Positions 29,773 to 60,980 of a DNA stretch of 64,000 nucleotides are shown here, piece by piece (position 1 is the stretch's first letter; every line of letters starts with the position of its first letter). The stretch is from assembly GCF_006345805.1 (NCBI RefSeq), contig NC_043001.1, positions 64,356,001 to 64,420,000 of the forward strand, read 5' to 3'. The notes beneath the pieces are model-generated. The model was given only the letters and a program-made list of their open reading frames with translations. It was not told the DNA's origin and searched no databases. Position numbers and translations under genes: made by a program. Source of the stretch: Octopus sinensis. Taxonomy: Eukaryota.

Positions 29773-32700
29773 TTTCCTCATACCTTCAGGAACATTTAAA
29801 AGACAATGCTATAAAAGATGTTAACCCAGAGCTGATAGCAGGCAAACTAATCATTAGCCCAGCAGCCACACCAACCCAGAGCCTGGTGAAAAGCCCAGCA
29901 GCTATGGGGAGTGTTGGGGAAGCAGGCAGATAAAAATTGTCATCCTCTCCCTCTTTCTCAACGTTAAGTAGAATATTTTTCTTTCATCAATGATTAAGTT
30001 AGGCTGTGTAAATGTGCGTGGAATGGAGTCGAAATGGAAACAGGTTTGTTTCCTGGACGACCTCAGGACACAGAATAGATGTGGCTATTGCATTTGAGTC
30101 CAATATGAGCAGACCTCAAGCATTCTCACCTCTTCTGGAAAATTATGAGAAATTTATTTTTTCTAGCCAGGGAAGAGGAGCAGGTATGGCAGTCCTTACC
30201 AGGAAGAGCTTGGACTTACTGGTAAGTACTGTCTTTCTGGACCCAGAAGGTAGGCTGGTCATCCTGGATGTGACCCACATGAGTAAGCAGTCCTTCAGGT
30301 TGGTAGCTGTGTATGCTCCTAACGAGCTTGGGTAGTCGTTTTTTTTCCGAAACCTGGAGCACTTTCTAGTGATGTCAAAAATGGTAGTTCTGGTAGGGGA
30401 TTTTAACACTATCTTCGATACGTGGGTCGATAGTGTTGGCTCAACTGATAGGAAAAGGAATCCTAGCCTCAAGAGTCTACTAGACAGTTTTAATCTAGTA
30501 GACCGTTACCGACTGGATGAGCTGAGCGTTCCACAGTGGACGTGGAGTAAAAACGACGGCTCACACAGATTGTACTTAGGTAGAGTATTCATTAGGGAAA
30601 GAGATAACAATACTTTTAATCATCCACAGTTTTGTATTGTGCCTTACACAGATCACAAACTTGTGATATGTGAGGTACATGTAGATAAATGCCAGAGAAA
30701 GGGACCAGGGTATTGGAAAATGAACAAGTCTATTTTGACATATGAAGCCTTCCGTACCTGGATTAAGGTGTTAGTACAGAAGGCAATATGTGGCCCTATC
30801 ATTAATAATAGTTGGTGGCATGCCCTCAAAAGAGCCATCTGTTTGGTGTCCATCAGATTTAGCAAGCAGCTAAGTTGAGATAGGACTAGATAAGAGGGCG
30901 ATTTAGTTAAGAACTTAGATGAAGCAATAGAATCTGGCTCTGCATCTAGAGTGCAGGTGGCAAGAACAGTCTTGTACCATCACCTCAACTCCAAGCACAA
31001 AGGTTGCAGAGCTAGAGCTAAGCTACATGCAGGGAAACGAGATGGTATTAATGTTGCCGGATGGGCACGTGTGGAGAGTTAGAGAGGTAAAAAGGCCTCT
31101 ATAAAGTCTTTAACTAATGAACAGGGGCACAAGATCTATGGACAGGAGGAGATGCAGAAAGTCTTTCACCAGCATTTCGCCTGGTTGTTTGGTGGGGGCG
31201 GTTCACTTGAGTGTGGGGAGGCCTTAAAGGACATCCTAGCTGGTGGGCTGCGACTCTTGGCATATGAGGCGGAGTGCTGTGAAGGACCGATCACTCCTGT
31301 GGACGTAAGAGAGGTGTTGGCTGAGTGCGCCAGGAAAAAGTTGCCAGGGTTGGATGGTCTGCCCTATGAGTTTTATCGTTGTATGCCGGACTTGTTCGGG
31401 GATATACAGGCAGGCATCTATACAAACTGGCAACAGAATGGGAGGACTCCCAGTTCTGTGAACTGGGGAGTGGTAACCCGAGCATGGGGGATAGTATTAG
31501 CAATTACAGGCCCATAACTCTACTTAATGTAGAGTTAAGGATTTTGGCCAAGGTGTTAGCGAAAAGGTTGACGGCTGTTGTGGAGAAACTTGTAGGGAAA
31601 ACACAGACATGATCAACCCCAGGCAGGTCAATCCAGAATAATCTTCACCTTCTCTGCTACACCTTAAACAGGGTTGGGAAATTAACCGGCAAAAGAAGGG
31701 CAATAATCCATTTAGACCAAAGTAAAGCATTTGATAGGGTAGACCATTGGTACCTGGGAGCAGTCCTCAAAGGGGCTGAGGTGGGCCCTGGGTTTCGAGG
31801 GTGGATCCCCGCTATGTACAGCGGCATCAAGTCCAGTCCAGATAACTGGTTACCTGAAGGAGCCGTTTTCGATCAAGCGCTCAGTTCATCAAGGGTGTCC
31901 CTTGTCTCCGCTTCTGTACGTGTTGGCTCTAGAGTCATTGCTGCGGAAGTTGGGAGGCAATCCTAATGAAATTGGATGTGGTAAGTCTGTTTCTGCTTAT
32001 GTAGATGATGTCACCTTCATCGTGTCCGATGAAGCACAGCTACCTTGTGTAGAAAATGCTCTCCGAGGATATGAAGCAGTGGCAGGGCAAAAGTTAACAA
32101 GGACAAGTCCATTGGTTTGCGCCTTGGCACCTGGAGGAACAAGCCGATATCGTCTAGTGTTGTGGATCACTGGACAGATGGTCCTGTTAAGTTGCTTGGA
32201 GTTTGGTTTGGCCCAGACTCTCTGACAGAGAAGAATTGGAGTGAGGTGGCAGACAAAGTAGAGGCCATAGTATGGAAGTGGTCCGGAAGGGCTATGTCCT
32301 TGAAAGGAAGAAAGGAAGGACAGAGATGGTACAGGTATTTACGGCATCTGTAATTACCGCCTGACCGTTGTCCCTTGCCCCTATGGAATAAGGGCAAGGG
32401 ACAGATGGAAGGGAGGAAAGGCACTCCATTTGCTGCCAGGAACTGTTAAAGAGCAGGTTGGGAATGCCTTAGCTAATGATGCACAGACATGTTGAGGCTG
32501 AGACATCTCTGGTGCCACCTGGAGGGTGATAAGGTGTGGAGTCCACTGGCAGAGGAATTCTTCCCTCGACTGGCTTGTATGGAGAGATTTAAACCCAGCT
32601 TCATAAAAATACAGAATCTGACTTTATGGCAGAAGGAGTGCCGTCAGGCACTGTGGCTGATCCACAAGGCTGGCAGCTGGAATACTACCTCGGTGTTCTA

Positions 32701-33410
32701 TAGAGGGCTGGTAGAGGCAAAAAATAATGACATCCTAGGAGGGGCTCTGGGGTTCAACGAGAACCAACTTGCCAACCTGTTTAAAAAATCTTTCAGGCCT
32801 GGGTACTTGGACAACTACCAAAAATCCCTGACCTGGAAGTGCTACAGGAACGCTTTACCTGTTTGCAATAAGTTATCTAGGCATGGAATGTCAGTGCCAC
32901 CGACGTGTCCAAGATGTGAGCTGGACAATGAAACCGTTCAGCACACTTTTTCACAATGTCGGGAACTGTCAAGCTTGATAAGTTACGTAGAACACATGTT
33001 GTTGCATCTGGGACGAGTACAGCTGTTGGCTGGATCTATAGTAAAGATGATATCACCAACTGGACTCTCAAAGGAAGGTGAGGCTTGTTTTTACTGTACA
33101 GTGGCAGTATTGAAAGAGTGTATGGAGAACTAGAATAGAAGATTTCGTGACAGGGTCCTTCGTCTCTGGCCCGGGTTTGTTAACCTACTTCAGATACCAT
33201 CTGAAGAGCTAGATGGGGTTGGAGAGGAAGACCCTGCTGCTGAGAGAGTATGAAAAATGTTGGAAGGATGTGATGAGAAAGGTGGGTGTCAGTAACCCAG
33301 CTTAATTATTGACGAAAGGAAAAAGTTAGTTGCTGGGCCTTACAGGCTGTCAGGTGTGAAGTTTAAACTGGTTTCTTTTATTTCTTTTATTTTAAAAAAA
33401 AAAGGATTTT
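29770..33410 (+). mobile_element. Degenerate Tx1/L1-clade LINE (ORF1 tail + ORF2 APE-RT-zinc finger)
   Basis: ATG at 29990: MIKLGCVNVRG; VVLVGDFN; GPGYWKMN; PGLDGLPYEFY; NYRPITLLN; LDQSKAFDRV; SPLLYVLALE; AYVDDVT; CPRC...ETVQHTFSQC. Many stops and frameshifts. Confidence 0.9.
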
Positions 33411-33566
33411 GTAAAAGTCAATTAAATCATATATATTATACTAAAATTTTTAAACGTCCATTCGAACTCATCATAACATTTTTGTAATTGTTTTGTCCTG
33501 TAATGTTCCATCCGTGTACTGATTGTATAATCATAATAAAGAATTTACCTCTAGCCAAATAATTAT

Positions 33567-33611
33567 TCTGTGCTGATGAAGGGAAATAACCTGGAAATCC
33601 TGATATGCAGA
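33567..33611 (+). ncRNA. Degenerate minimal type I hammerhead ribozyme motif
   Basis: UCUGUG-CUGAUGA-AGG(GAAAUAA)CCU-G-GAAA-UCCUGA-UA-UGCAGA. Stems I and II are present, with one extra G before GAAA. Confidence 0.45.
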
Positions 33612-33689
33612 TATTGTTTTGATTTGAGTGGGGGTGCTTGTTTGAAAATATAAGGACACAAATCATGTCATTTAGCCAGCTGGAGACAA

Positions 33690-35030
33690 TGTCTCATGGG
33701 GTTAAATTACAATAGGACTGCCATGTTATGTTGGCAAGCAATCTATACTCCTAGAGTAAATTTTGATGAAGCATTGTATGATATTACTCTTGGGCAGAGG
33801 TGAGTATCAGGATGTCATCAATATATCTGGAGATGAAGAAGTCATTGACATGTGCTAAAGATTCAGCAATGTTAACAAGCATACTGAATTTGAAATAGAA
33901 TACCTGGATGAATCTGGAATTGTTCTGACTCCTTGATTTCCAAATCAAGATCACAGAAGAGGATTCCGTCAATACTAACTTTTACAGGAAAGCTGCCAGT
34001 AAGAGCTTTTTTTTACACAATGAGTCAGTCTTACTCACCAGTGCCAAAGCTGCATATGTGTGAAATGAAATCACACCTATAAGTGACATATAGTGACACA
34101 ACTGATAAAGCTTCCAAACTGACAAAGTTTCTTAAGGAATCAAATGATTCTTTAAGAACTTAACACATAAGGCTATCCACCATCTTTAGCCAAATGACTG
34201 CATCTATAAAACACAAAAGTGAGTAAACCACATAAGAGGGCCCATAATCCCAAGTCTAACATATGCTTCCTTAAACTACACTATTTTGATGACAGAACCA
34301 CTACTGCCAAACAATGTGATCTGCAAGAAGGGACTCAACATACAGAGGTGAAACCATCTTTAGCCAGATGACTGCATCTATAAAACATGAAAGTGAGTAA
34401 ACCACATAAGGGGGCCTACAATCCCAAGTCTGATATGTGCTTCCTTAAACTGCCCTATTTTGATGACAGAATTACTACTGCTGTACATTGTGATCTGCAT
34501 GGAGGAACTCAACATAGAGAGATGCACACCAGTCCATCTCTGAGAAAATTTCTGTCAAGGAATAATGCCACAGATAGCATTGTGGGATGCACACTATCCA
34601 ATTTCTCCATCAACAACTTCAAAATGTGCTTGAGGACTTGTGTAGTATATGAGGTTGTCTACAGTAAATGTAGGACATCATGCATTAGGAGCACTACCAG
34701 GAAATTGCACATTTGCATAAAAGGAGATATGCACACAGAAACTTCAATCAAAAAACACCTAAAGAAGTGCGAGATCCAAGATTTCAAAGTAGCCATTAGG
34801 GACTGATTGATGATTCTTTGGGCCTGTAATTAGGTGGTGAAGCCGATACCTATTAGAATTGACTATTATAGATCCCAGGTTAGGAGTGGTTGAGTATGAA
34901 ATTTCAATGGAGGATTTATTAAAAATAAGAGCACTTCCCTGAACTCTCCTGAGGTCAATACAGGGATGATGCTCTTCTTGGGGCCATGACAACATCAAGA
35001 TCATCTATTGAGCATTTCCTGAAAACCCTC
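33690..35030 (+). mobile_element. Degenerate Penelope-like element (RT C-terminal half + GIY-YIG)
   Basis: FEIEYLDE...LLDFQIKI...FYRKAA; LKLPYFDD; CLRTCVVYEVVYSKCRTSCIRSTTRKLHI (eroded GIY-YIG). The YIDD motif lies in an inverted 71-bp block, and there is a 174-bp tandem duplication. Confidence 0.8.
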
Positions 35031-47489: not shown

Positions 47490-49938
47490 ATCAGTATAAT
47501 TTTTCAAAAAAGATAAAGAAGTGATTTTGTTGTTATGGCTGATTGGAGCACTTACAATATTAACTATCTGAACTGATTTTGGCCATGATTTTTTGGAAGA
47601 ATTAGGTAGATGCACCAAGACAAAAGTAAAATTTCAAGTAAAAGAAAACGCCATACCAGTGTTTAAAACGAAGCGAGCTTTACCTTTCGTGGCATTGAAT
47701 CAAGTCAGCGAGAAATTAGATAGGTTAGAAAAGCTGGGAGTTACAGAAAAAAGTTGATTATTCAAAATGGGCAGCACCAACTGTTTATGTAAAGAAGAAC
47801 AATAACAAAATACAAGTATGCGTGGACTTTTCAACAAGTTTGAACAAATGTTTAAGGACATACAATTATCCACTACCAAGCCCAGAGGAAATTTTTGCAA
47901 AATTCAATGGAGGAAAATTTTTCTCAAAATTGGACTTGTTGGAGGCATATTTACAGTTACAAGTCAAGGAAGAATGTTTGAAATTATTAACGATAAACTC
48001 TCATAAAGGTTTATATAAATTCAATCAACTTCCTTTCAGGATAAAGGTGGCACCTAGTATTTTCCAACAGGTGACGGACATGATGCTTGTGGATAGGAAT
48101 TCCACTATAGCGTATTTGGATGACATACTCATAAAAAGTGAGTCTAGAGGCCAGTATGAAGAACATGTTAAAATGTTTTTTGTGAAGATAAAAGGAGTAC
48201 GGATTCAAATTCATTGAGGAAAAAGGTGAATTTTGCATGCCAGAAATAAAGTATCTAGGGCAAGTTATCAATAAAAATGGTCACAAGCTAGATCCTTCAA
48301 GATCGACTGCAATAAAAAATATGCCTACCCTGAAAAATATTACAACATTACAAGCATTCTTAGGGCTTGTGAACAATTACCAAACATACATGAGCTAAGA
48401 GCACCCCTAAACAACCTATCGAAAAAATGCATAAAATGGTATTGGTCAGACAGGTGTCAAAAGGTGTTCGAAGAAATTAAAAAAGTTTTAACATTGGAAC
48501 TGTCAATATCACACTTTGATCCTAATTTAGAAGTAGTAGTAGCATCAGATGCTACTGAAAGTGGTATAGGAGCAGTAATTTTACACAAGTATGAAAATGG
48601 TAGTGTAAAACCCATTTCTCATGCTTCACATTCATTGTTGGCAGCTGAAAAAACTACAGCCAAATTGAGAAGACAGCACTAGCCATTATTTTGCTGTGAA
48701 AAAATTTCACAAATTCATACATGAAAGGAAATTTAGTCTGCAAACAGATCACTGCCCATTGTTATCAATTTACAGATTGAAAAAGGGTGTCCCCACACAT
48801 TCAGAACCAATTGCAGCATTGGGGGACAAGCATGCTAAATTATGATTTTAAGGTAGAATTTCTACCATCAAAAATACAATGAACCATTTGAGGACATGGT
48901 AATAGCAGCATTAAAAGCCAAAATCAAAATAGAAAATATACTCTGCAACATAGTATATGAACTACTTGTCACCTTAGAAGAAATAAAAATTAAAGCAAAG
49001 AAGTGTGCATTCATAATAAAAATGAAAAAATAGTGAAGTTTGAAACAAATACAAAATCTCATGTAACCGAGCGTAACAATTTCAAGATAGTATTCCATAT
49101 GTGATGACATACTTATGTATGCTCAGAGGGTTGTAATACCTGTTTCTTTGCAAAACCATATGTTAAAAGAATTCCACATGGGACACCCAGGACTTGCAAG
49201 AATAAAGGCATTGATGAGAAGCTATGTTTACTGGCCAACTATGGATCAGGATATTGAAAAATTGGTGAAAGCCTGCAGGAGTTGTGTCCTGGCAGCAAAG
49301 GCATTGAAAATAAGGTGAAATACTTCAAAATCAGTGACATGGTTCTTTTCAAAAATATACAGAAACGGAAAAGAAAGTTGGGAAGAAGGTATAATAAGTA
49401 AACATTTAGGAAGAGTAATGTACACAGTAAAAGGTCATACATGGGAATGCAAGAGACACCTAAACCAACTGAACAAAAAGTTTATGGAAGAAAGAATAAG
49501 ACATGAAGAGCCAATGGAATTTGTTTATGCCATTTTTGTCATACTGCTACCCCAAGGAATAATTGAACCAACGAGTATAGTGATTAGTAAAAAAAAAGCA
49601 AACAGAACTTTTGCAAGTAGACCCAAAATGAAAAAAATATTCCAGTTTCTTCCTGGAAAATTTTTTTTAAAAAAGGTTGGGGAGGTGGTAATAAAGATAA
49701 TAAATAAAAGAAAAATATTGGCTTCCAACGAAAGTCAAACTCAAAAAGGGGAGATGTAGTGAAATCCTGACACCCTTGTTGGATAGCAATTCAACTGTCC
49801 TAAACTGTATCAAGGTGCATGCACATTGTAAGTGAGAGACAATGTGGTGTGTGCAGGCGCTTTGTGAAGACAGTTGTAGAAGTCGTTGAGAAGAGATATT
49901 GTTTGTTACGTGTTGTTTCTGATTAATATTTGTATTGT
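47490..49938 (+). mobile_element. Gypsy LTR retrotransposon remnant (RT, RNase H, integrase zinc finger, PPT, start of 3' LTR)
   Basis: YPLPSPEEIF, FSKLDL, YLDDIL, ASDATESGIGAV, HMGHPG...YWP...CRSC; integrase core deleted. PPT AAAAAGGGGAGA is followed by TG at 49755; the LTR-like sequence is cut off at ~49939 by the tandem array. Confidence 0.88.
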
Positions 49939-50103
49939 ACGTAAAGTGTACTAGCCATTTCATTGTGGCTAGCCACTGGGGGTGGGTGTTACTGAAGCTT
50001 TTAGCCCCAGGAGGTCATCGTCTCCAGCTGGCTTTAGACACACTTTCTGTGCCCTTCTGATATTCGCAAAGGGAGGTCATCCCCTCTCGAAAACCTAAGT
50101 GAT

Positions 50104-50150
50104 ACGCACAGACTATAGTTTCGAGGTTTTTGCCTCTCGTCAACGTACGC
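50104..50150 (-). ncRNA. Type I hammerhead ribozyme (U3 core variant), unit 1
   Basis: GCGUACG-UUGACGA-GAGG(CAAAAA)CCUC-GAAA-CUAUAG-UC^-UGUGCGU. Predicted cleavage between 50111 and 50110. Confidence 0.8.
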
Positions 50151-50347
50151 TAATCACCGGTTTTCGATTGGATTTATCTTTATTATAGGCACGATGACCC
50201 AAATTAAGAGGGGACATCACAATCAGGACATGGGGTACATATAATAAAAAAAAATTGAAAAATATGAAGTGAAATGAATATAATGGATTAGATGGAATGG
50301 CTTACGAGCCCCCCAAAACTCGCAGCTTCATTTAAAACACAGTTCTG

Positions 50348-51672
50348 CTATACTGGTCGTTCATCTGTCAGGTATTCTATCAACCTCTCCTGATCCACAA
50401 TAGCTGGCAAAGGGTCATAACGTACATATAACCATTCACATACACTATAATCATCTCTCATTTTCTCCAATGTCTCTCTCTCCACGATTACCGCCTTCCA
50501 CTGGTCATCATATATTTCTGGGTTCAACTTTACTCTAATTAAACCTTTCCTACCTGCCAACATCTTTTCCGTATTTTTGTCCTTGAAATATAACATTACC
50601 ATTCTGTGTTTCTTTCCTTTGGGTCTTCCTCTTCTCTTACAAACTTTCAACTGCTCTTCCATTCTTCTGTCCCATTCTTCCTCTGCTGTTAATTTTGCTG
50701 GTTCACTTGCTTTTGCTTCTGCATCACTCCCTTCGCACGTTCGGTCTTTCCTCTCGTCAGTAATATTGTTTTTCGCTTTTTTCTTCTTTTTTTTTGTTCT
50801 TTGGGTGGTGATTCCGCCCGCGTTCTTTTTCTATTTTCTTTCTCCAACTCTTCACCACTTTCCACATTATCTGTAGTGATGATTTCCTCCTTCACACACG
50901 CATCTTTCCACTCCTTCGTTAAAGCCTCCAGTGCTATCGTTTTTTCCTGCACTTCTCCCAGCGGACACACATCCTTCATGTGGCCTCTTATTTTGCAATT
51001 GTAACACACTGGGGGTCTCCCCTCCACCACGACTCTAAGACGTGTCTCATCAGGGAACACCAACTCCTCTGGGATGTTGTACAGGTCTGGCACGGTTATA
51101 TGTACCAGAACCTGCACCGCATATCCCCACCACTTTACTTCTGTTGACCTTTCCACCTTCAACACCTCAGCTCTTTCCTTGCAGTTGAAAACCACTGCCG
51201 CTAGAATCCTTTCCATATTAAGTTCCAGTGAAATCCTACCGATTCTTATTCTTACTGCCCTCTTTCCGCAGTAACTTGGTAATAATGTCCATCTTTCAGA
51301 TTTCAAAATTTTCGTGGCATTCCTTCTCACTTCATTTTCATTTTTAAAATGGACAACCACTGTAGCGTATTTTCTTCCTCTATTGTAAAAGGTAGGTTCT
51401 CCCTCAATTCCCTGCAGACATTTCTCTATTTCCTCCGTCTCTGCCACTTCTATTTTCTTTGAAGCCACGCTCCAAGTTCTGTATGTTATCATACGTTTTT
51501 CCGCTTCTTTTGCTTCTTCTTCAGACGGTGTGACTCTCACACAATCACCTTCCTTCTTCAAGCTGTCGAAATATTTTTCTAAAGTCTCTTTCTCGACTAC
51601 CACTTCTTCCAGCTCTAGTTCACTTGCAGTCAGGCCTCTGCCTGCCGCTCCCACATACGTCTGGGCTTACAT
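50348..51672 (-). pseudogene. LINE ORF1/Gag-like protein, unit 1 (disrupted)
   Basis: ATG at 51672-51670 is immediately followed by TAA (CAA in unit 2), and there is a frameshift in an A-run near 50790. The knuckle CYNCKIRGHMKDVC is intact. Confidence 0.85.
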
Positions 51673-52092
51673 TTTCGAAAAATCTCCAAAATAAATTCAC
51701 CACGTCTCAATGGCCTCCACCAACGAACTCGAACTCACAACCTCGACACACCAATAACGCAATCAAAAATTCCGACACCAAAAAAAAAAGCGGTTTTCGA
51801 TCGGAGAGACCTGTTTGCGAATATTTATTTAATGTTTTTCCCAGCAACCACTGTCACTGATTTCAAAAAACTGTCTGAAAGCATTAATAAATCTCCGAAC
51901 GAGATGTAAGCAGTAACCGCTCGACAACGTAAAGTGTACTAGCCATCTCAATGTGGCTAGCCACTGGGGGGCGGGTGTTACTGAAGCTTTTAGCCCCAGG
52001 AGTTCATCATCTGCAGCTGGCTTTAGACACACTTTCTGTGCCTTCTGATATTTGCAAAGGGAGGTCATCCCCTCTCGGAAACCTAAGTGATA

Positions 52093-52137
52093 CGCACGGA
52101 CTATAGTTTCGAGGTTTTTGCCTCTCGTCAACATACG
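52093..52137 (-). ncRNA. Type I hammerhead ribozyme (U3 core variant), unit 2
   Basis: CGUAUG-UUGACGA-GAGG(CAAAAA)CCUC-GAAA-CUAUAG-UC^-CGUGCG. Predicted cleavage between 52099 and 52098. Confidence 0.8.
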
Positions 52138-52381
52138 GTAATCACCGGTTTTTGATTAGATTTATCTTTATTATAGGCACGATGGCCTGAATTAAGAGGG
52201 GACATTATAAAACAGGACGTGGGGTACATAAATTAAAAAAATCGAAAAATATGAAGTGAAATGAATATTTATAATGGATTAGATGGAACGGCTTACGAGC
52301 CCCCCAAAACTCGCAGTTTCATTTAAAATACAATTTTACAATTTTCAATTTTACAATTTTACAATTACATATACAATTCTG

Positions 52382-53704
52382 CTACGTCGGGCGTTCATCT
52401 GTAATGTATTCTATTAAATGCTTTCGGTCTACAACAGCTGGTAAAATGTCATAACGTATATAATACAATTCATATACAGCGAAAAACACACTTTTCAATT
52501 TCATCAATGTCTCTTTCTCTACGACCGCCGACTTCACTTGGTCATCAATTTTTGGGTTCAACCTAACCCTGATTAAATCTTTCTTACCTGCCAGCCTCTT
52601 TTCGATTTCTTTGTTTTTCATATACAATATTACCACTTTAAGATTTTTTCCTTCGGGTCTTCCTCCTTCGTTACATAGATTTAACTGCTTTTCCACTCTT
52701 CTATCCCATTCTTCCTCCGCTGTTAATTTTGCCGGTTCACTTGCTTTCGCTTCTGCATCTCTCTCTTCGCACGTTCGATCTTCCATTTCGTCTGTTGTCT
52801 TTTTTTTGTTTTTTTTCTTTTTTTGAACTTTAGGTGGTGATTCCACCCTCGTTCTCTTTCTATCTTCTGTTCTTTCCTTTTCTTCACCACTTTCCACATC
52901 CTCTGCATTCACACATTCCTCCTCCACATCCGCCATTTGCAACTCCTCCGTCCGAGCCTCCAATGCTATCGTCTCCTCTTGTACTCTTTTTCTCAGACAC
53001 ACATCCTTTATGTGGCCTCTAATTTTATATATGTAACACACTGGGGGTCTCCCCTCCACCACGACTCTGAGATGTGTCTCGTCGGGGAACACCAACTCCT
53101 CCGGGATGTTATACAGGTCAGGCATGGTAATGTGGACTAAAGCCTGCACCGCATAACCCCACCACTTTACTTCTTTTGACCTTTCCACTTTCAATATATC
53201 AACGCCTTCCTTGCAGTTGAATACCACTGCCGCTAGAATTCTTTCCATATTCAGCTCCGGCGAAATCTTACTGATTCGTATCCTTACTGCCCTTTTTCCG
53301 CAATAACTTGGTAATAACACCCATCTTTCTGTTTTCAAAATTTTCGTTGCATTCCTTTTCGCTTCGTCTTCGTTTTTAAATTGCACGACCACTGTTGTGA
53401 ATTTTCTACCCCTGTTGTAGTAGGTAGCTTCTCCTTCAATTCCATCCAGACAGTACTCAATTTCCTCTATCGGTGCCACTTCTATTTTCTTTGAAGCCAC
53501 GCTCCACGTTCTGTATGTTATGATACGTTTCTCTGCGTCTTTCGATTCTTCTTCAGGTGGTGTGACCCTCACACAGTCACCTTCTCTCTTCAAGCTGTCA
53601 AAATAATTCTTCAAAATCTCCTTCTCGACGGTAACTTCCTCCAACTGTAGTTTGCTCACAGCCAGGCCCCTGCCTGCTGCTCCCGCATACGTTTGGGTTT
53701 GCAT
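52382..53704 (-). CDS. 440-aa LINE ORF1/Gag-like nucleic-acid-binding protein, unit 2 (open frame)
   Basis: Uninterrupted ATG-to-stop frame: RRM-like region (VVVQF...LLPSYCGKRAVRIRI), RVVVEGRPPVC knuckle region (CYIYKIRGHIKDVC, second Cys lost), basic/acidic linker and a ~100-aa C-terminal domain. The resemblance to L1/Tx1 ORF1 is from memory, not from a search. Confidence 0.75.
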   Translation of the reverse strand: MQTQTYAGAAGRGLAVSKLQLEEVTVEKEILKNYFDSLKREGDCVRVTPPEEESKDAEKRIITYRTWSVASKKIEVAPIEEIEYCLDGIEGEATYYNRGRKFTTVVVQFKNEDEAKRNATKILKTERWVLLPSYCGKRAVRIRISKISPELNMERILAAVVFNCKEGVDILKVERSKEVKWWGYAVQALVHITMPDLYNIPEELVFPDETHLRVVVEGRPPVCYIYKIRGHIKDVCLRKRVQEETIALEARTEELQMADVEEECVNAEDVESGEEKERTEDRKRTRVESPPKVQKKKKNKKKTTDEMEDRTCEERDAEAKASEPAKLTAEEEWDRRVEKQLNLCNEGGRPEGKNLKVVILYMKNKEIEKRLAGKKDLIRVRLNPKIDDQVKSAVVEKETLMKLKSVFFAVYELYYIRYDILPAVVDRKHLIEYITDERPT

Positions 53705-54135
53705 TCTTGAGAAAAAATCTCAAAAAAATTTAAAACGCCGCAATCGCTTCCGCCAATGAACTCGATCTCGCAACCGCAACACAACAATAACGTAATCAAA
53801 ATTAACCGACACCAAAAAACAGCGACACACCAATAACGTAATCAAAAATTCCGACACCAAAACAAAAAAGGTTTTCGATTGGAGAGACCTGTTTGCGAAT
53901 ATTTATTTAATGTTTTTCCCAGCAACCACTGTCACTGATTTCGAAAAACTGTCCGAAAGCATTAATAAATCTCCGAACGAGATGTAAACAGTAACCGCTC
54001 GACAACGTAAAGTGTACTAGCCATCTCAATGTGGCTAGCCACTGGGGGTGGGTGTTACTGAAGCTTTCTTGTTCGGAGATTTATTAATGCTTTCAGACAG
54101 TTTTTCGAAATCAGTGACAGTGGTTGCTGGTAAAA

Positions 54136-54166
<31 letters not shown>

Positions 54167-54399
54167 TGCATATACACTAATGTGCAAATTCACACATACA
54201 TTTAGTCTTGGGTTGAAGTTCCAGATTCAGTAATATAGCGAATAAAGGGTTCAACGTTGGTTCTATGTCAGCGTGTGTATATAAGAAGTTTTTGCATAAT
54301 AAGATAAAAAACCAAGGCTGTATAGATATTAGAGCACTTATGGTCCTTCAGTTTTTCTAAGCTTTGTAAGAGAACTCAGAAGGCTGCTTGGAACTTTAC

Positions 54400-56325
54400 A
54401 GCATTCCCCTCGTTCATGGGCGAGTTCTACCATCAGATCTCGAGAGTGGCCATGGGAACGCGAATGGGCCCCAACTATGCGAACCTGTTCGTTGGCTATG
54501 TTGAGGCCCAAATATTCTCTAATTTCACTGGTCCCACTCCTGAACTATACGGTTGTTACGTTGACGACATTATCAGTGCCACCTCACTCTCCCGTGAACA
54601 TCTAGATTCCTTCCTCTCTTTTGTTCAATCTTTCCATCCAGCCCTCCACTTCACCTCCACTATCTCCAACACCTCTGTCTCCTTCCTCGACATTTCGGTC
54701 AGCATTCTTCACTCCACTCTTACCACCTCCATACACTACAAACACACAGACTAACACTCATACCTCAACTTCTCTTCCTCCCACCCAGAACACACCAAGC
54801 TTTCCATCCCCTATTCCCAATTCCTCTGTCTACGTAGGCTCTGTAGTGACGACCATGACTTTGAGACTCAGTCTCAACGTATGGCTCACCACTTCATCCT
54901 ACGTGGATACCCCCTCACCACTATCCACACCGCCCTTGCCAGAGCACGGTCCGTGGACCGTGTATCTGCTCTCTCTCCCCGAACCCGCCCTGTAGTCTCC
55001 CGCCTCCCTTTTCCCCTCACTTACCACCCCACGACCCTACCTCTCCAACGCACCATTCTTCGAGCTTTCCGGCATCTTCAGTCCAACCCGTCCACTTCAC
55101 ACCTCTTCCCTAATCGACCCCTCCCCTCTTTCAAACGAGCCCATAACCTACGAGACCTTTTGGTCCATAGCTCCTTCCCTGACCCTACCTCCCAACCTGG
55201 CTCATTCCCCTGCTCCCGCCCACGTTGCCGCACTTGCCCTTACCTCTCCAACACCACCCTCCTCACTGGCACTCATCATCGACCCTATCACATTCGCAAC
55301 TCCTTCACCTGCACCTCCAGCAATATCATCTATTGCGTCTCTTGCTCTCTCTGCCATTCCCTGTACATCGGACAAACGGGACGCCGCTTGGCTGACCGGT
55401 TCGCGGAACACCTCCTTGACATCCGCCTTGCCAATGACACACCGGTCTCACGCCATTTCCGCTCCACCGGTCACTCCTTGCAACACCTGTCTGTGTTCGG
55501 TTTGTCCTTGCATAGAGGCCATCGGATACCTGTTTGCGCCGTGAACAGGAATTAATCTTCTCTCTTCGCTCTTTTATGCCATTTGGTCTCAACTCTCCCC
55601 CTCCTCATCTAACCCCCCTCTCCCCCTCCTCATCTAACCTCCACCCGACCCCTACTTCTCTTCAGTCCTTCATCCTTTCACCCCTACTCCTCTTCCCTTC
55701 TTCCCTTTTTCTTCTTCCCTCTTCCCCTTCCCTCTCTCTCTCTCCCCCTCCCCCTCTATCCTCCCTCCTCCTCTCCCCTCCTCTTCTCCTCTCCTTCCTT
55801 CTCCCCTTCCCCTCCTCTTCTCCTCTTTCCTTCTCCCCCTCCCCCTCCCCCTCATCTCCTCTCTCTACACGATACCATACGACTTTACACATCACCCCTC
55901 CTCCTCCCCTCTCCCCCTCATCTCCTCTTTCTACACTACACCATACGACTTTACACATCACATCATATATACATACACACGTCCAGACCTCTCATACACA
56001 CACACTCTTATGTTGGGGCGAGGTCATTTAACCCTATTATCTCCCCTAATTTCACTCTTGCGTCTCACGTTTGATCTTTGACTTCTGGTCGAAATCAGAT
56101 CGCCATGTTGATTCGCTAGCTTCTGCACGCATTTTTTCTCTCTCCTTGTTTCTTTCTGTGTTTCTTTTCTGTGTATCTTTCTGTTGAAGAGCGTAGGCTC
56201 GAAACGTAAAAGACTTGTTTTATTTATATTCCTGAGCGCCATACTAATACAATTGTTTGTTTGTATTCCACCTGCCTTCGTCTTTTGTCTATTTTCATAA
56301 AGCTTCCTGTTATATATATATATAT
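54400..56325 (+). mobile_element. 5'-truncated Penelope-like element (RT + GIY-YIG + tail), defective
   Basis: VAMGTRMGPNYANLF, YVDD, SFLDI, YKHTD* (stop at 54752); C..PRC.TC, YCVSCSLCHSLYIGQTGRRLADRFAEH; CT-rich spacer; tail ending at (TA)n. Confidence 0.92.
56176..56213 (+). ncRNA. Minimal hammerhead-like motif (A6U variant) in the Penelope tail
   Basis: UCUUU-CUGUUGA-A-GAGC(GUAG)GCUC-GAAA-CG-UA^-AAAGA, with a palindromic ACGU stem III. Confidence 0.55.
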
Positions 56326-57227
56326 ATGGTTGGCGGCCTTCTGAGTTCTCTTACAAAGCTTAGAAAAACTGAAGGACCATTGCAATAAGTGTGTGAATCT
56401 GAGAAGGGGAATATGTTGAATAAAATCATAATTAACTGATCCTCTTGTATTTTCTTTTCCCCATAGCCAGAGACTTTTCAGCACCCCCTGATCATATATC
56501 ATATCGTATTTTTTATTATTTATTTATTTTCATTCTCTCTCTGGCTTTCATTCATTTATCTAATTATTTTCCCCCTCAAATATAGTATTCAAACTACTTG
56601 CTTCGATTTTCTCTCTCTCTCTCCCCTCGTGTCCCTGACTTCCCCCCCCCACACAAATCCCTAATTTCCTTATAAGACAGTGGGCGATCGTATTTCCTCC
56701 TCATTTACTCGCTTCACCTCCAGAGAAAACACGGATTTTCAAAAATGGCCAGCTATGTACTTAACTTACAACCTGCTGCCTTCATATTTTTAAGCGTTTG
56801 TTTAGATACCTTGATCTGTTCCCCTTTCGTTTCTCTATCTCTAAAACATGGCGTCTTCATGCATTTTTAAAGTTTATCTTTTCTTTCAGCACCATCTTCA
56901 TTGTTTATTCCATTCTCCTTATGCCCCCTCGTATCATATATCATATCGTATTTTTTATTATTTATTTATTTTCATTCTCTTTCTGGCTTTCATTCATTTA
57001 TCTAATTATTTTTCCCCTCAAATATAGTATTCAAACTAGTTGCCGATTTTCTCGACCGCCCTCCCACACCCTCCACCAATACCGGAAGTTTCTACCCAAA
57101 TACCAGAAGTTCTACCCCTGCCTTACTTAACTACCCCTCTCCCCCACTAGCACCTATGTAGGGTTTATCTGATCATATAGCGCAAAAAATTGTGAAATGT
57201 ATGCAGGTTGTAGTCTAGTGTTTCCAT

Positions 57228-60200
57228 ATGAAATCTGCCAAATGCAAGCTTTCTTTTCAGGTACATGACATGGCTGTCCCTCATCCCAGGGTCTCAGATG
57301 CCCACACCTCCCACACACTCAGAGTTGGCACACTCAATGTTGGCACATTGAAAGGTAGGTCTGGAGAGATTGTAGAGCTGCTTGAACGGAGACGTGTAGA
57401 TGTATGCTGTATCCAGGAAGTAAGGTGGAGAGGAGGTTCCGCTAGGCTCCTCACAGGCAAGGAACACAGGTACAAGATTTTCTGGGCAGGGAACACTGAC
57501 GGGGTCGGGGGCGTGGGTATACTTCTTGCGGAGAAATGGGTAGGTAAGGTAATCGAGGTAGTCAGAGTAAGTGACAGAGTAATTAAAATTAGATTAGTCC
57601 TTCACCATAGGACAGCTACCATCATCTCGGCATATGCCCCTCAACCAGGGCTACCGGAAGGACAAAAAGACCAATTCTATGACACCCTATTGCGGACTAC
57701 CTCGTTGACAAATGACAGTGACCTTCTCTTCGTGGCAGGTGATTTCAATGGACATGTTGGACGACATGTCGGGGGCTTCCATGGCGTCCATGGAGGCTAC
57801 GGTTTTGGCTCTCGTAATGAGGAAGGAACCAGGCTGCTGGAGTTCTGCGATGCAAATGACCTTATGGTCTGCAATACCAACTTCAGGAAACCCACCTCTC
57901 ACCTAGTCACCTACCGTTCTGGCAGACACACCAGCCAGATTGACTACATCCTTGCCAGAAAAAGGGAAAGAGGGCTGATTATAAATGCCAAAACCTTTCC
58001 AGGCGAAGAATGTACTCCTCAACATAGATTAGTAGTTAGTGACATCAGGGTCAGAGCTAAATGGTTGCCCAGAAGAAGACCAGCTTGGAGGAGAAGGGTC
58101 TGGAAGCTTAAAGATCCTGCAAATGGACAGAGATTTAGAGACATACTACTCGAAGCCTTTGACGACATAGAAGGGGATATAGCTTCACTTAACGTGGAAG
58201 ACAACTGGAGATTCCTACGAGACAATCTGCTGACAGCTACTGAACAGATCTGTGGATGGAGCAAAGTACCATCTCGACCCAGAGTAACATGGTGGTGGAA
58301 CACCGTGGTTGACAGGGCTATTAGACAAAAGAGACAGGCTTGGAAGGACTGGAAGAACGGTGGTAGCAGGGAATTGTATCAGACAGCCAGAAGGGAAGCT
58401 AGGAGACAGGTTTATTTAGCCAGAGGGGAAGCGGATAAGAAAAAATTTGCCAATGTTCTGAGCCGTGAGGATGAAAGACTTGAGGTATTTCGTGTTGCAA
58501 GACAGTGTGTGAGAGAGAATCGTGATGTGGTAGGAGAGAAGTGTGTTCGCATGGATGATGGTTCACTTGCGCTAAATGAGGATGCAAAGAGAGAGGTTTG
58601 GAGATGCCACTATGAAAGGTTGCTGAATAAAGAAAATGAATGGGATAAAGAGAGTCTGCCGAATGTTGACCCAACAGAGGGACCAGCTATCCGAGTTGAT
58701 AGTTCCGTGGTAGCTAAGGCAATTAGAAGCATGAAGACAGGGAAAGCCCCAGGCCCATCAGAATCACTGCAGAGATGCTCAAAATATCTGGCAGTGTCGG
58801 CTATAACCTAGTCACCCGTATAGTCAACCAGGTGATACACGAAGGAGTCATACCCAATGACTGGTGTAGCAGCATACTAGTCAACTGCTACAAAGGTAAG
58901 GTGATGCCCTAGATACAAATAATTACAGAGGTATCAAGCTGTTGGATCAGGTAATGAAGGTTACGGAGAGGGTCATAGCCCAACTAATTAGAGAGAGAGT
59001 TAGTTTAGATGAGATGCAGTTTGGATTCGTGCCAGGGAAAAGCACCACTGATGCTATATTCCTGGTAAGGCAGCTGCAGGAGAAATACCTAGCCGAAGAT
59101 AAGCCCCTGTACCTGGCTTTCGTTGACATGGAGAAAGCCCTTGATAGGGTCCCCCGATCCCTCATCTGGTGGTCAATGAGGAAACTAGGGATAGATGAAT
59201 GGCTGGTGAGGGCTGTGCAAGCCATGTACAGTGATGCCGTAAGTAAGGTTAGGGTTGGCAACATGTACACAGAAGAATTCCGGGTAGAGGTTGGGGTCCA
59301 CCAGGGTTCAGTACTCAGCCCCCTCCTATTTATCATAGTCCTCCAGGCAATTGTGGAGGGATTCAAGACAAGTTGCCCCTGGGAGCTCCTCTATGCTGAC
59401 GACCTCGCTCTAATTGCTGAGTCACTATCAGAACTGGAGGAGAAGTTCCAGGTGTGGAAGGAGAGTTTAGAATCGAGGGGCCTTAGAGTCAACCTAGCTA
59501 AAACCAAAGTACTAATAAGTAGAAAGGTAGACAATCCACAAATATCCTCAGGAAGATGGCCCTGCTCGATCTGTAGAAAAGGTGTAGGTAGAAACTCTAT
59601 AAGATGTACCCAGTGTAAGCTATGGACACGTAAGAGGTGCTGCAATGTCAAAGGTAGGCTAACTGGGAAGATAGTTTTTGTATGTGACAGATGCTCGGGA
59701 GCATTGACCTCCGAAAATCTGCAGAAAACAACTTCCGTCACTTTCCAGGGGGAAAAACTAGAAGTAGTTGCTAGCTTCTGTTATCTAGGTGACCAAGTCA
59801 GTAGTGGGGGTGGGTGCGCTGAAAGTGTAACTGCTAGAATAAGAATAGCCTGGGCAAAGTTTAGGGAGCTCTTACCTCTGCTGGTGACTAAAGGCCTCTC
59901 GCTCAGAGTAAAAGGCAGACTGTATGATGCATGTGTACGAACAGCCATGCTACATGGCAGTGAAACATGGGCCGTGACTGCTGCGGACATGTGTAAGCTC
60001 GTGAGGAATGTAGCCAGTATGCTCCGATGGATGTGTAATGTCAGCGTACTTACTCGACAGAGCGTTAGTACCTTGAGAGAAATGTTGTACCTAAGAAGCA
60101 TCAGTTGTGGTGTGCAAGAGAGACGATTGCACTGGTATGGTCATGTGGCGAGAATGGATGAAGATAGGTGTGTGAGAAAGTGCCAATCCCTAGCAGTTGA

Positions 60201-60980
60201 GGGAACCCATGGAAGAGGTAGACCCAAGAAAACCTGGGACGAGGTGGTGAAGCACGACCTTCGAACGTTAGGTCTCACCATGGAAATGACTAGAGACCGA
60301 GACCTATGGAAGTATGCTGTGCATGAGAAGACCCGGCAAGACTAGTGAAGCCATAACCCGTGGCCCCTACCTGGGACGTAGTCAGTCCACCTGTGCATAC
60401 CTTCCTTCTTGTGACACTTGTGAAGACCTGTTGAGGCAAGTGAAAATCAAATCAAATCAATCAAATCAAATCAAATCAAATCAAACCAAATCAAAATAGA
60501 TGAACATCAATGGAATTTGTATCCTTGTGGTACCGGTGCTGGTGGCACATAAGAAAACCATCCGAGCGTGACCGTAGCCAGTACCGCATCGACTGGCCTC
60601 CGTGCTGAGGGCACGTAACAAACACCATCCGAGCGTGGCCGTTCGCCAGCCTCGTCTGGCACCTGTGTCGGTGGCACATAAAAACACCATCCGAGCGTGG
60701 CCGTCTGCCAGCCTCGTCTGGCACCTGTGTCGGTGACACATAAAAACACCATCCGAGCGTGGCTGTCTGCCAGCCTCGCCTGGCACCTGTGTCGGTGGCA
60801 CATAAAATCACCCACTACACTCTCGGAGTGGTTGGCGTTAGGAAGGGCATCCAGCTGTAGAAACACTGCCAGATCTGACTGGCCTGGTGCAGCCTTCGAG
60901 CTTACCAGACCCCAGTTGAACCGTCGAACCCATGCTAGCATGGAAAGCGGACGTTAAACGATGATGATGATGATGATGAT
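57228..60980 (+). mobile_element. Full-length-looking RTE LINE (APE + RT + PHD insertion), long 3' UTR, (GAT)n tail
   Basis: 527-aa and 467-aa frames joined by two single-base deletions (~58760, ~58900). Motifs: GTLNVGTL, AGDFNGHV, QIDYIL, QFGF, HQGSVLSPLLF, YADD. UTR with (AAATC)n and 62-bp repeats. Confidence 0.95.
60553..60805 (+). repeat. 62-bp tandem repeats in the RTE 3' UTR
   Basis: aaacaccatccgagcgtgg... starts at 60620, 60682 and 60744, with a degenerate copy near 60553. Confidence 0.9.

What the first reader, a model, noticed from the sequence alone, without database searches (positions are those of the whole stretch)
49939..54138. Candidate protein-coding retrozyme: tandem ~2-kb units, each a hammerhead ribozyme plus a Gag/ORF1-like gene, with no RT
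Seen: head-to-tail units (1988 and 2078 bp). Each has a leader, a ~440-codon ORF with RRM-like and CCHC-knuckle features, a 3' UTR and a type I hammerhead on the same (minus) strand. A read-through transcript cut at both ribozymes would release a 1988-nt monomer (52098 to 50111) containing leader, ORF and UTR. Established: animal non-LTR retrozymes are tandem hammerhead repeats of a few hundred bp that are non-coding, yield circular RNAs and are thought to use Penelope-type RT. ORF1-only LINE derivatives (HAL1) exist but are not ribozyme-delimited. Inference: a hybrid, non-autonomous element that encodes its own RNA-binding/packaging protein and may propagate via a ~2-kb circular RNA. I do not know of such an element being described.
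Basis: partly seen in the sequence, partly recalled or inferred. Interest (0 to 1): 0.93.

Follow-up and report, generated by a model that had tools for sequence, protein, structure and literature searches.

The report
ORF1-only octopus LINE copies with hammerhead
Two head-to-tail copies of an octopus jumping gene that has lost its reverse transcriptase but kept its RNA-binding protein gene, each ending in a small hammerhead ribozyme motif that full-length relatives with a reverse transcriptase also carry, so this is an unusual LINE derivative, not a new protein-coding "retrozyme".

Summary
The sequence features are real. On the minus strand there are two head-to-tail units (2078 and 1987 bp), each with a leader, an ORF1-like gene, a 3'UTR with AATAAA, and a type I hammerhead fold.
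- Only unit A has an intact 440-codon ORF, and its zinc knuckle is broken. Unit B, the one lying between the two ribozymes, has a stop at codon 2 and a frameshift.
- Both hammerheads have U instead of C at core position 3 and score below Rfam's cutoff.
- The two ORFs are only about 80% identical (dS 0.58, dN/dS 0.27), so the units are not copies of one RNA.

The protein is ORF1 of an octopod L1-type LINE. In Argonauta, Octopus vulgaris, O. sinensis and an ENA contig, homologues sit directly upstream of an endonuclease plus reverse-transcriptase ORF2. ORF1-only relatives, mostly in head-to-tail arrays, recur in Octopus genomes, usually without a hammerhead.

A decayed ORF2 copy of the same LINE 17 kb away in this window carries the same hammerhead tail, and the fold is kept by compensatory changes. 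Best reading: HAL1-like, ORF2-deleted LINE derivatives from a LINE lineage with a hammerhead in its 3' region. The circular-RNA and Penelope model is not supported here. Whether the ribozyme cleaves remains open.

The parts
54067..54138 (+). Inverted 72-nt copy of unit positions 22-93, at the upstream end of the array, next to a (TG)n microsatellite
   Evidence: blastn 95.8% identity in reverse orientation; sequence read; alignment
54004..54067 (-). Partial copy (63-64 nt) of the unit's 3' end, directly upstream of unit A
   Evidence: (family D6)
51926..54003 (-). Unit A (2078 bp): 5' segment, leader with a 46-nt internal duplication, ORF1, 3'UTR, hammerhead tail
52382..53704 (-). ORF1 of unit A. 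Intact at 440 aa: two RRM-like domains, a broken CCHC knuckle (CYIYKIRGHIKDVC), a K/E-rich linker and a C-terminal domain
52159..52172 (-). AATAAAGATAAATC, the conserved 3' end and poly(A)-signal motif of the LINE family (unit A). The same motif lies at 50171-50184 in unit B
   Evidence: the same motif ends the relatives in L001, L002, L004, L006 and L007
52082..52148 (-). Hammerhead, copy A. Type I, core UUGACGA...GAAA, helix III palindrome ACUAUAGU, predicted cleavage after C52099
   Evidence: Rfam HH9 35.9 bits, E 2e-6, below the gathering score of 52
51926..52098 (-). Tail of about 172 nt between the cleavage site and the 3' end of unit A, ending in a stem-loop and ...TACACTTTACGT
   Evidence: positions ~12-128 are homologous to the tail of the ORF2 copy
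49939..51925 (-). Unit B (1987 bp), with the same layout as unit A
50348..51672 (-). ORF1 of unit B, a pseudogene. It has ATG-TAA at codons 1-2 and a 5-nt insertion causing a frameshift near 50775. The CCHC knuckle is intact (CYNCKIRGHMKDVC)
50094..50160 (-). Hammerhead, copy B. Three substitutions relative to copy A, all preserving helix I. Predicted cleavage after C50111
   Evidence: not listed by Rfam cmscan
53870..53880 (-). One of four copies of the direct repeat (A/G)ATC(G/A)AAAACC(G). The others are at 52146-52157, 51791-51802 and 50158-50169. A pair brackets each leader+ORF1+3'UTR core
   Evidence: meaning unresolved (see the rival explanations)
29993..33284 (+). Decayed ORF2 (APE+RT) copy of the same LINE family, with no ORF1 upstream
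   Evidence: tblastn 43-59% aa identity to the ORF2s of L003 and L001; an HMM scan finds no ORF1 there
33285..33723 (+). 3'UTR, AATAAAGAATTTACC, hammerhead (33556-33622, canonical CUGAUGA core) and tail of that ORF2 copy, homologous to the 3' part of units A and B
   Evidence: Smith-Waterman score 132 against shuffles 42±7; custom CM 34.7 bits, E 2e-8, full length; tail score 72 against 23±3.6; not called by Rfam

Best explanation
The locus is a short head-to-tail array of two ORF2-deleted ('half-LINE', HAL1-like) members of an octopod L1-type LINE family.

Each unit has these parts, in order:
- a 5' segment and leader;
- ORF1, made of two RRM-like domains, a CCHC knuckle, a basic/acidic linker and a C-terminal domain;
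- a 3'UTR ending in the family's AATAAAGA motif;
- a tail of about 240 nt holding a type I hammerhead with a short, palindromic helix III.

The hammerhead tail belongs to the LINE lineage, because an ORF2-bearing copy in the same window has it too.

Inferred mechanism:
- The units supply ORF1p for their own RNA and are copied by the ORF2p (endonuclease + RT) of full-length relatives, which recognises the shared 3' region.
- Units from two diverged subfamilies were joined end to end, either by RT jumping from the 5' end of one RNA to the 3' end of another or by successive insertion. Other members of this family form such arrays too.
- The inverted 72-nt piece fits twin priming or hairpin priming at the 5' end of the insertion.
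- The hammerhead, if active, would act as a dimer to cut read-through or multimeric transcripts about 70 nt past the poly(A) signal. This step is inferred and untested.

Both copies at this locus are now dead or damaged.
For: Shown:
- ORF1 has 352 homologues at E<=1e-3. All that were traced to an organism come from Octopus species or Argonauta.
- Homologues are followed directly by an APE+RT ORF2 in L001, L003, L007 and L008.
- The L003 ORF2 matches human L1 ORF2p at E 2e-71 over the endonuclease and RT.
- ORF1-only relatives with the same 3'UTR end exist in L002, L004, L005 and L006.
- A and B show dN/dS = 0.27 with dS = 0.58, so ORF1 was kept by selection in ORF2-less lineages.
- The in-window ORF2 copy is followed by a homologous 3'UTR, hammerhead and tail. 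The unit's 5' segment does not lie upstream of it, so the tail travels with the LINE.
- The O. vulgaris ORF1-only element in L004 is followed by the best hammerhead hit among four loci (66.6 kb), exactly downstream of its AATAAA (18.8 bits, E 0.002-0.003).
- Across the four hammerhead copies 95.4% of cells are paired, and 8 of 17 pairs change on both sides. Slid controls give 19-52% paired. The alignment was fitted to the model's structure, which leans towards it.
- The AF2 model and Foldseek give a tandem-RRM fold.

From the literature:
- HAL1 is the known ORF1-only precedent, and L1 UTRs have repeatedly been replaced by unrelated sequences (PMC5753468).
Against: - The terminal segments of A and B differ only by private substitutions (3-5%). 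This includes the 63-nt partial copy and the inverted fragment. The ORFs differ by 20%. Plain joining of two diverged RNAs does not predict near-identical ends.
- A 12-nt direct repeat brackets each leader+ORF1+3'UTR core. This looks like a target-site duplication of a core inserted into a 344-nt hammerhead repeat.
- The first 123 nt of the unit show no significant similarity to the 5'UTRs of full-length relatives.
- Most relatives examined lack the hammerhead tail.
- No intact autonomous partner with the same ends was seen.
- The hammerhead has U3 in both units, and no cleavage data exist.
- Only eight related loci could be examined, not the source genome.
Confidence: 0.55

Rival explanations
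1. Nested insertion. A short array of a ~356-bp hammerhead-bearing repeat (retrozyme-like, or another short non-autonomous element) formed first. Two different ORF1-only LINE cores later inserted independently at the same site in each monomer, about 14 nt upstream of the hammerhead fold (26 nt upstream of its catalytic core), each making a 12-bp target-site duplication. The LINE family would then be site-specific for this repeat.
For: - The 12-nt direct repeat AATCGAAAACCG sits at both borders of each core.
- Copies of the flanking segments carry only private mutations, as if identical when the array formed, while the cores are 20% diverged with dN/dS 0.27.
- L004 also has a long direct repeat (TGCTGGGTTCG.CTA.CTCT) at both borders of its core, and a hammerhead just downstream.
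- Hammerheads of the same type occur away from LINEs in L006 and L007.
- The unit's 5' segment is not LINE-5'UTR-like, while the part after the repeat is: z = 5.6 against L007.
Against: - The 5'-truncated ORF2 copy at 29993-33723 has the hammerhead tail downstream but no 5' segment upstream, which a site-specific insertion into the repeat would leave.
- No empty repeat was found in the window or the loci.
- The unit start GTCGAGCGG resembles the 5' ends of L006, L001 (defined by its TSD) and L004.
- L002, L003, L005 and L006 form arrays with no such repeat between units.
- Identity falls gradually rather than in a sharp step at the repeat borders.
Confidence: 0.22
2. This is a composite, RT-less 'coding retrozyme': a read-through transcript is cut at two hammerheads, the 2-kb monomer is circularised, and a Penelope-type RT copies it into tandem arrays.
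For: - A tandem layout with a hammerhead in each unit.
- An inverted 5' fragment plus a partial upstream copy, next to a microsatellite. These are typical of Penelope-type insertions (PMC8557442).
- A Penelope-like remnant lies across the microsatellite.
- The hammerhead fold is conserved.
- Animal retrozymes are linked to PLEs (10.64898/2026.07.22.740005).
Against: - The units are 20% diverged in the ORF, so they do not come from one circle.
- Array ends and unit junctions are not at the cleavage site.
- The same tail follows a LINE ORF2.
- ORF1-only arrays exist without hammerheads.
- The neighbouring PLE remnant shares no sequence with the unit, and no hammerhead was found in the part of it that was scanned (55000-57400).
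- Known animal retrozymes are 170-400 nt and non-coding (PMC7229834, PMC7761336).
Confidence: 0.1
3. The hammerhead is a dead passenger. A LINE master copy sat upstream of a hammerhead-bearing repeat and picked it up by 3' read-through (3' transduction). The motif has no role in the element's life cycle.
For: - Most relatives end right after AATAAAGA and do well without it.
- U3 in both units departs from the consensus core and scores below Rfam's cutoff.
- Helix II is imperfect in the ORF2 copy and in L004.
Against: - The fold is kept through compensatory changes in three diverged lineages.
- The 3-8 core pair reads C-G, U.G and U-A in different copies, as expected if the pair is maintained.
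- A U3 core UGUUGACGA is a reported natural variant (PMC7151607).
- Caveat: there are only four sequences, and the alignment was fitted to the model.
Confidence: 0.3

Closest known systems
HAL1 ('half-L1'), the ORF1-only non-autonomous derivatives of mammalian L1 (PMC5753468, citing Bao & Jurka 2010)
   Same: - Keeps ORF1, lacks ORF2, and shares its ends with an autonomous LINE.
- ORF1 is kept under purifying selection.
- Presumably mobilised in trans by ORF2p.
   Different: - It is found in an octopod.
- ORF1 is of the RRM+CCHC type, not the coiled-coil/RRM/CTD type.
- Units commonly lie in head-to-tail arrays.
- This lineage carries a hammerhead in its 3' tail.
Animal non-LTR retrozymes (PMC7229834, PMC7761336, 10.64898/2026.07.22.740005)
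   Same: - A type I hammerhead in each unit of a tandem repeat.
- No RT within the unit.
- Short or palindromic helix III, as in dimer-dependent motifs.
   Different: - Retrozyme units are 170-400 nt, non-coding and near-identical within an array.
- Here the units are about 2 kb, carry a LINE ORF1 and are 20% diverged.
- Here the ribozyme tail is shared with a LINE ORF2 copy.
LINEs with self-cleaving ribozymes: HDV-like ribozymes at the 5' end of R2, RTE, L1Tc and others (own knowledge: Eickbush and Luptak laboratories)
   Same: A non-LTR retrotransposon carrying a small self-cleaving RNA motif that could trim co-transcripts.
   Different: - Those are HDV-like ribozymes at the 5' end that cut upstream of themselves.
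- This is a hammerhead in the 3' region, downstream of the poly(A) signal.
- I found no report of a hammerhead in a LINE. That is absence from the searched library only.
Penelope-like elements with hammerheads in pseudo-LTRs (PMC8557442)
   Same: - Minimal type I hammerhead near the 3' end.
- Partial tandem copy plus an inverted 5' fragment.
- Insertion next to a microsatellite.
   Different: - No PLE-type RT or GIY-YIG domain in the unit or in its relatives.
- The relatives encode an APE+RT ORF2 of L1 type.

Membership tests
Hammerhead ribozyme, type I (Rfam clan CL00010, HH9-like) | Conserved core C3-U4-G5-A6-N7-G8-A9 ... G12-A13-A14 | tested here: inconclusive
   Units A and B read UUGACGA...GAAA (U3 for C3). 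The in-window LINE copy reads the canonical CUGAUGA. L004 and L007 read UUGAUAA, a U3-A8 pair. A U3 variant is reported in nature (PMC7151607).
Hammerhead ribozyme, type I (Rfam clan CL00010, HH9-like) | Three helices around the core with helix I open, and an A15.1-U16.1 pair followed by H17 | tested here: met
   Helix I has 6+5 bp and helix II 4 bp. Helix III has 2-3 bp, followed by GUC. Across 4 copies 95.4% of cells pair and 8 of 17 pairs show double changes.
Hammerhead ribozyme, type I (Rfam clan CL00010, HH9-like) | Reaches Rfam's curated gathering score | tested here: not met
   HH9 gives 35.9 bits against a cutoff of 52 for copy A. Copy B and the LINE copy are not listed.
Hammerhead ribozyme, type I (Rfam clan CL00010, HH9-like) | Self-cleavage | not testable with these tools
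   Needs in vitro transcription of monomer and dimer constructs.
LINE ORF1 protein (RRM + CCHC type) | Encoded directly upstream of an endonuclease+RT ORF2 in the same element | tested here: met
   Met for homologues in L001, L003, L007 and L008. Those ORF2s carry APE and RT domains. Not met in the window units themselves, where ORF2 is deleted.
LINE ORF1 protein (RRM + CCHC type) | RRM fold(s) and a CX2CX4HX4C knuckle | tested here: met
   The AF2 model has pLDDT 80-90 over residues 25-225, and Foldseek matches tandem-RRM proteins at E~1e-4. The knuckle is intact in unit B and in relatives, but mutated in unit A.
HAL1-like ORF1-only LINE derivative | ORF1 kept, ORF2 absent, 3' end shared with an ORF2-bearing LINE | tested here: met
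   ORF1 has dN/dS 0.27.
HAL1-like ORF1-only LINE derivative | Mobilised in trans by the LINE's ORF2p | not testable with these tools
   Inferred from the shared 3' region only.
Animal non-LTR retrozyme | Short (170-400 nt) non-coding tandem units, each with a hammerhead | tested here: not met
   The units are 1987 and 2078 bp and carry a 440-codon ORF. Definition from PMC7229834.
Animal non-LTR retrozyme | Expressed as unit-length circular RNA | not testable with these tools
   No RNA data. The 20% divergence between neighbouring units argues against rolling-circle copying of one circle at this locus.
Penelope-like element | PLE-type RT with GIY-YIG endonuclease | tested here: not met
   No RT or GIY-YIG in the units. 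The relatives' ORF2 is of APE + L1-like RT type. The PLE-like remnant at 54416-55555 is a separate element on the other strand with no shared sequence.
Penelope-like element | Partial tandem copy, inverted 5' fragment and a hammerhead near the 3' end | tested here: met
   description in PMC8557442. These features are not exclusive: L1 twin priming and RT template jumping can give similar structures (own knowledge).

The most novel reading that the evidence does not exclude
An L1-type LINE lineage in octopods has taken a functional, dimer-dependent hammerhead into its 3' region. Its ORF1-only tandem derivatives would then be processed by that ribozyme into unit-length RNAs, possibly circular, which the LINE's own RT copies. 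That would make them LINE-mobilised, protein-coding counterparts of retrozymes. It would also show that LINE RTs, not only Penelope RTs, can drive hammerhead-bearing repeats in animals.
Probability: 0.15. Interest if true: 0.85.

Novelty: new variant of a known kind. Interest (0 to 1): 0.55.

Why it matters
- Hammerheads in animal genomes are tied to Penelope-like elements and to small non-coding retrozymes. Which RT moves retrozymes is still argued: LINEs or PLEs in PMC7229834, PLEs in the 2026 preprint.
- A LINE family whose 3' region holds a structurally conserved hammerhead would be a second, independent link between hammerheads and retrotransposons. I did not find one described.
- It would also give a concrete place to test whether a LINE RT recognises a hammerhead-bearing tail.
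- The locus shows that HAL1-like ORF1-only elements, known from mammals, also arose in cephalopods, stay under selection, and build head-to-tail arrays.
- If the motif proves to be an inactive passenger, the finding reduces to an ordinary pair of decayed LINE derivatives.

Tried and rejected
- The word-indexed protein search with the full ORF found nothing, because the K/E-rich linker swamped the candidate list. Searches with alignments returned only 1 and 3 proteins. The exhaustive HMMER search was what worked.
- Four look-ups of UniRef-only Octopus proteins were not on record.
- Rfam found no hammerhead in L001-L004 or at the LINE copy, only microsatellite noise. A custom covariance model was needed.
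- I considered an ordinary 3'-truncated LINE or PLE. This was rejected because the units have a complete family 3'UTR and tail, so ORF2 was lost by internal deletion.
- I considered a host tandem gene pair. This was rejected because of the transposon ends, the partial and inverted copies, and the broken ORFs.
- The apparent hammerhead-like string at the L003 unit junction was not significant.
- Folding the 344-nt segment between the direct repeats gave z = -2.3 linear and -1.9 circular, which is not informative.
- No ORF1 lies upstream of the in-window ORF2 copy. No 5' segment lies there or after its tail.
- No free-standing copy of the 344-nt segment turned up around the hammerheads of L006 and L007.
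- The species of the window was not determined. The closest proteins are from Octopus bimaculoides, at 45-52% identity.

Full report
**1. What is in the sequence**

On the minus strand, repeat finding gives start-to-start spacings of 1988 and 2078 bp. A self-BLAST defines two units:
- unit A, 54003->51926, 2078 bp;
- unit B, 51925->49939, 1987 bp, 79.8% identical to A.

Two short extra pieces lie upstream of A:
- a 63-nt copy of the unit's 3' end (54067-54005);
- an inverted 72-nt copy of unit positions 22-93 (54067-54138), abutting a (TG)n microsatellite.

The array ends at ...TACACTTTACGT (49939). The A/B junction reads ACGT|TGTCGAGCGG.

The two ORFs are not equivalent:
- Unit A holds an intact 440-codon ORF (53704-52382). 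Its zinc knuckle has lost the second cysteine (CYIYK...).
- Unit B reads ATG-TAA at the start and has a frameshifting 5-nt insertion. Its knuckle is intact.

**2. The hammerhead**

- Rfam reports nothing in the window at gathering thresholds.
- In E-value mode it finds HH9 at 52149-52077 with 35.9 bits (cutoff 52), E 2e-6.
- Copy B is not listed even in a 401-nt search, although it differs from A by only three substitutions (one in the internal loop, two in helix I that keep it paired).
- Both copies have core UUGACGA...GAAA, so U3 replaces C3.
- Helix II has 4 bp and a CAAAAA loop.
- Helix III has only 2-3 bp and lies inside the palindrome ACUAUAGU. This is the layout of hammerheads that cut as dimers (PMC7761336).
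- A U3 core of exactly this form (UGUUGACGA) is listed as a rare natural variant (PMC7151607).
That monomer contains the broken ORF B. ORF A has no hammerhead upstream of it.

**3. What the protein is**

- Pfam gives only a sub-threshold zf-CCHC hit, in unit B.
- An exhaustive HMMER search finds 352 relatives at E<=1e-3. Those that could be traced are from Octopus bimaculoides, O. sinensis, O. vulgaris and Argonauta hians.
- An AlphaFold model built on ten sequences is confident over residues ~25-225. It matches tandem-RRM proteins such as SFPQ/NONO, Sxl and IMP3 RRM12.
- In four loci the homologue sits directly upstream of an ORF2 with an APE endonuclease and an RT:
  - L001, Argonauta, with a 16-bp target-site duplication;
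  - L003, O. vulgaris, three tandem full-length 5.28-kb copies;
  - L007, O. sinensis;
  - L008, an ENA contig.
- The L003 ORF2 matches human L1 ORF2p at E 2e-71 over endonuclease and RT, far better than it matches R2 proteins.

The protein is therefore ORF1 of an L1-type LINE. The finer clade was not determined.

**4. ORF1-only relatives are common and usually tandem**

| Locus | Source | Arrangement |
|---|---|---|
| L002 | O. bimaculoides | at least three ORF1-only units head to tail at ~1.5-1.8 kb spacing; the third is strongly diverged |
| L005 | a Logan contig | head-to-tail ORF1-only units |
| L006 | O. bimaculoides | head-to-tail ORF1-only units |
| L004 | O. vulgaris | a single ORF1-only element inside a (TA)n microsatellite |

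- In L002, L005 and L006 the conserved 3'UTR end (...GTCCCCTC...AATAAAGA...) runs straight into the next unit's leader, with no hammerhead.
- Between the window's A and B, dN/dS is 0.27 with dS 0.58 (109 synonymous and 147 non-synonymous differences). ORF1 was therefore under purifying selection in ORF2-less lineages.
- It also follows that A and B are members of two diverged subfamilies, not products of a local duplication or of a single RNA.
- This is the HAL1 situation known from mammals (PMC5753468).

**5. The hammerhead tail belongs to the LINE lineage**

- The window holds a decayed ORF2 copy of the same family at 29993-33284 on the plus strand, 43-59% amino-acid identity to the ORF2s of L003 and L001.
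- Its downstream 440 nt align to the units' 3'UTR end, AATAAAGA, hammerhead and tail. The score is 132 against 42±7 for shuffles. The tail alone scores 72 against 23±3.6.
- A covariance model built from copies A and B finds this copy at 33556-33622 with 34.7 bits and E 2e-8, full length, with a canonical CUGAUGA core.
- The same model's best hit in four loci (66.6 kb) is L004 11662-11714 (18.8 bits, E 0.002). This lies exactly downstream of that ORF1-only element's AATAAA.
- On the four-sequence alignment 95.4% of cells pair, and 8 of 17 pairs change on both sides. Slid controls give 19-52% pairing.
- Caveat: there are only four sequences, and the alignment was fitted to the model.
- The 3-8 core pair reads C-G, U.G and U-A in different copies. 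That pattern is what maintenance of the pair would give.
- Upstream of the 5'-truncated ORF2 copy there is neither ORF1 nor the unit's 5' segment. So the tail moved with the LINE, not as a pre-existing target.

**6. Most likely mechanism**

Shown:
- The units are ORF2-deleted derivatives of a LINE lineage whose 3' region contains a hammerhead fold.
- They belong to two subfamilies.
- Both are now damaged.

Inferred:
- ORF1p acts on its own RNA, and a full-length relative's ORF2p copies it through the shared 3' region.
- Head-to-tail joining comes from RT template jumping or successive insertion, as in the family's other arrays.
- The inverted fragment comes from twin or hairpin priming.

Untested:
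- The hammerhead dimerises through its palindromic helix III and cuts read-through or multimeric transcripts.

- the neighbouring units are diverged;
- the array ends and junctions are not at the cleavage site;
- ORF1-only arrays exist without hammerheads;
- the same tail follows a LINE ORF2.

**7. What remains unexplained**

- The copies of the terminal segments differ only by private substitutions, 3-5% pairwise. This covers A, B, the 63-nt partial copy and the inverted piece. It looks as if they were identical when the array formed. The ORF1 cores differ by 20%.
- A 12-nt direct repeat, AATCGAAAACCG, brackets each core.
- The unit's first 123 nt are not recognisably LINE 5'UTR, whereas the stretch after the repeat is (z 5.6 against L007).
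- These points fit a rival in which two different cores inserted at the same site of a 356-bp hammerhead repeat.

Against that rival:
- the ORF2 copy lacks the 5' segment;
- no empty repeat was found;
- the unit start GTCGAGCGG resembles the 5' ends of L006, L001 and L004.

Exchange of ends between co-packaged RNAs by template switching could reconcile the data. Only the whole genome can decide.

**8. Comparison with what is known, and verdict**

- The closest known kind is HAL1 (ORF1-only L1 derivatives).
- The hammerhead and array features recall retrozymes and Penelope-like elements.
- Ribozyme-bearing LINEs are known only with HDV-like ribozymes at the 5' end (own knowledge).
- Searches of the held literature found no hammerhead-bearing LINE and no protein-coding retrozyme.

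I rate this a new variant of a known kind, of moderate interest. It does give a testable link between a LINE family and a conserved hammerhead motif.

Noticed in passing
window 54416-55555 (+): Remnant of a Penelope-like element: an RT fragment with YVDD (RVT_1 E 0.009), followed by a weak GIY-YIG match (E 0.014, below cutoff). It points away from the array across the (TG)n microsatellite at ~54140-54180. It shares no sequence with the units, and no hammerhead was found in the part scanned (55000-57400).
   Followed up: partly
L003 4445-20000 (O. vulgaris OX597840.1): Three head-to-tail full-length 5.28-kb LINE copies (ORF1 + ORF2), 99-100% identical, joined directly 3' end to 5' end. Tandem full-length LINEs are unusual and may reflect the family's mode of insertion.
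   Followed up: partly
L007 16908-16955 (-) and L006 5487-5556 (-): Hammerhead-like motifs away from any LINE. L007 has core UUGAUAA (a U3-A8 pair), a CAAAAA loop and a perfect 6-bp helix I (15.5 bits). L006 has core CUGACGA and the palindromic helix III AUCAUGAU (13.1 bits). This suggests free-standing hammerhead elements in Octopus genomes.
   Followed up: partly
window 53870-53880, 52146-52157, 51791-51802, 50158-50169: The 12-nt direct repeat AATCGAAAACCG brackets each leader+ORF1+3'UTR core. It could be a target-site duplication, a recombination microhomology or chance.
   Followed up: partly
window 53772-53875 (-): Unit A's leader has a 46-nt tandem duplication (TTTTGGTGTCGGAATTTTTGATTACGTTATTGGTGTGTCG...) that unit B lacks. 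It recalls the monomer repeats of LINE 5'UTRs.
   Followed up: no
window 47822-49759 (+): Decayed LTR-retrotransposon remnant (RVT_1 E 2e-12, followed by an integrase-like ORF) just downstream of the array.
   Followed up: no
window 40924-43167 (-), 57228-60345 (+), 18975-21762 (-): Other LINE copies with APE and RT domains, only 24-26% identical to the ORF2 of the family studied. The window is very rich in transposons.
   Followed up: no
window 29000-29400 (+): A short tandem repeat with a period of roughly 190 nt (motif AATAAACTGATTCCTTATGGG...) upstream of the ORF2 copy.
   Followed up: no
L004 9688-9806: A long perfect hairpin (GCCAAGCTAACTTGGCAGTCCAGAAAAATAG...CTATTTTTCTGGACTGACAAGTTAGCTTGGC) in the 5' region of the O. 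vulgaris ORF1-only element. The element lies inside a (TA)n microsatellite.
   Followed up: no
proteins P0032, P0058, P0064: Public gene models that fuse fragments of this ORF1 to WD40 (P0032), LDL-receptor class A (P0058) or other host sequence (P0064). These are probably annotation chimeras caused by the repeat.
   Followed up: no
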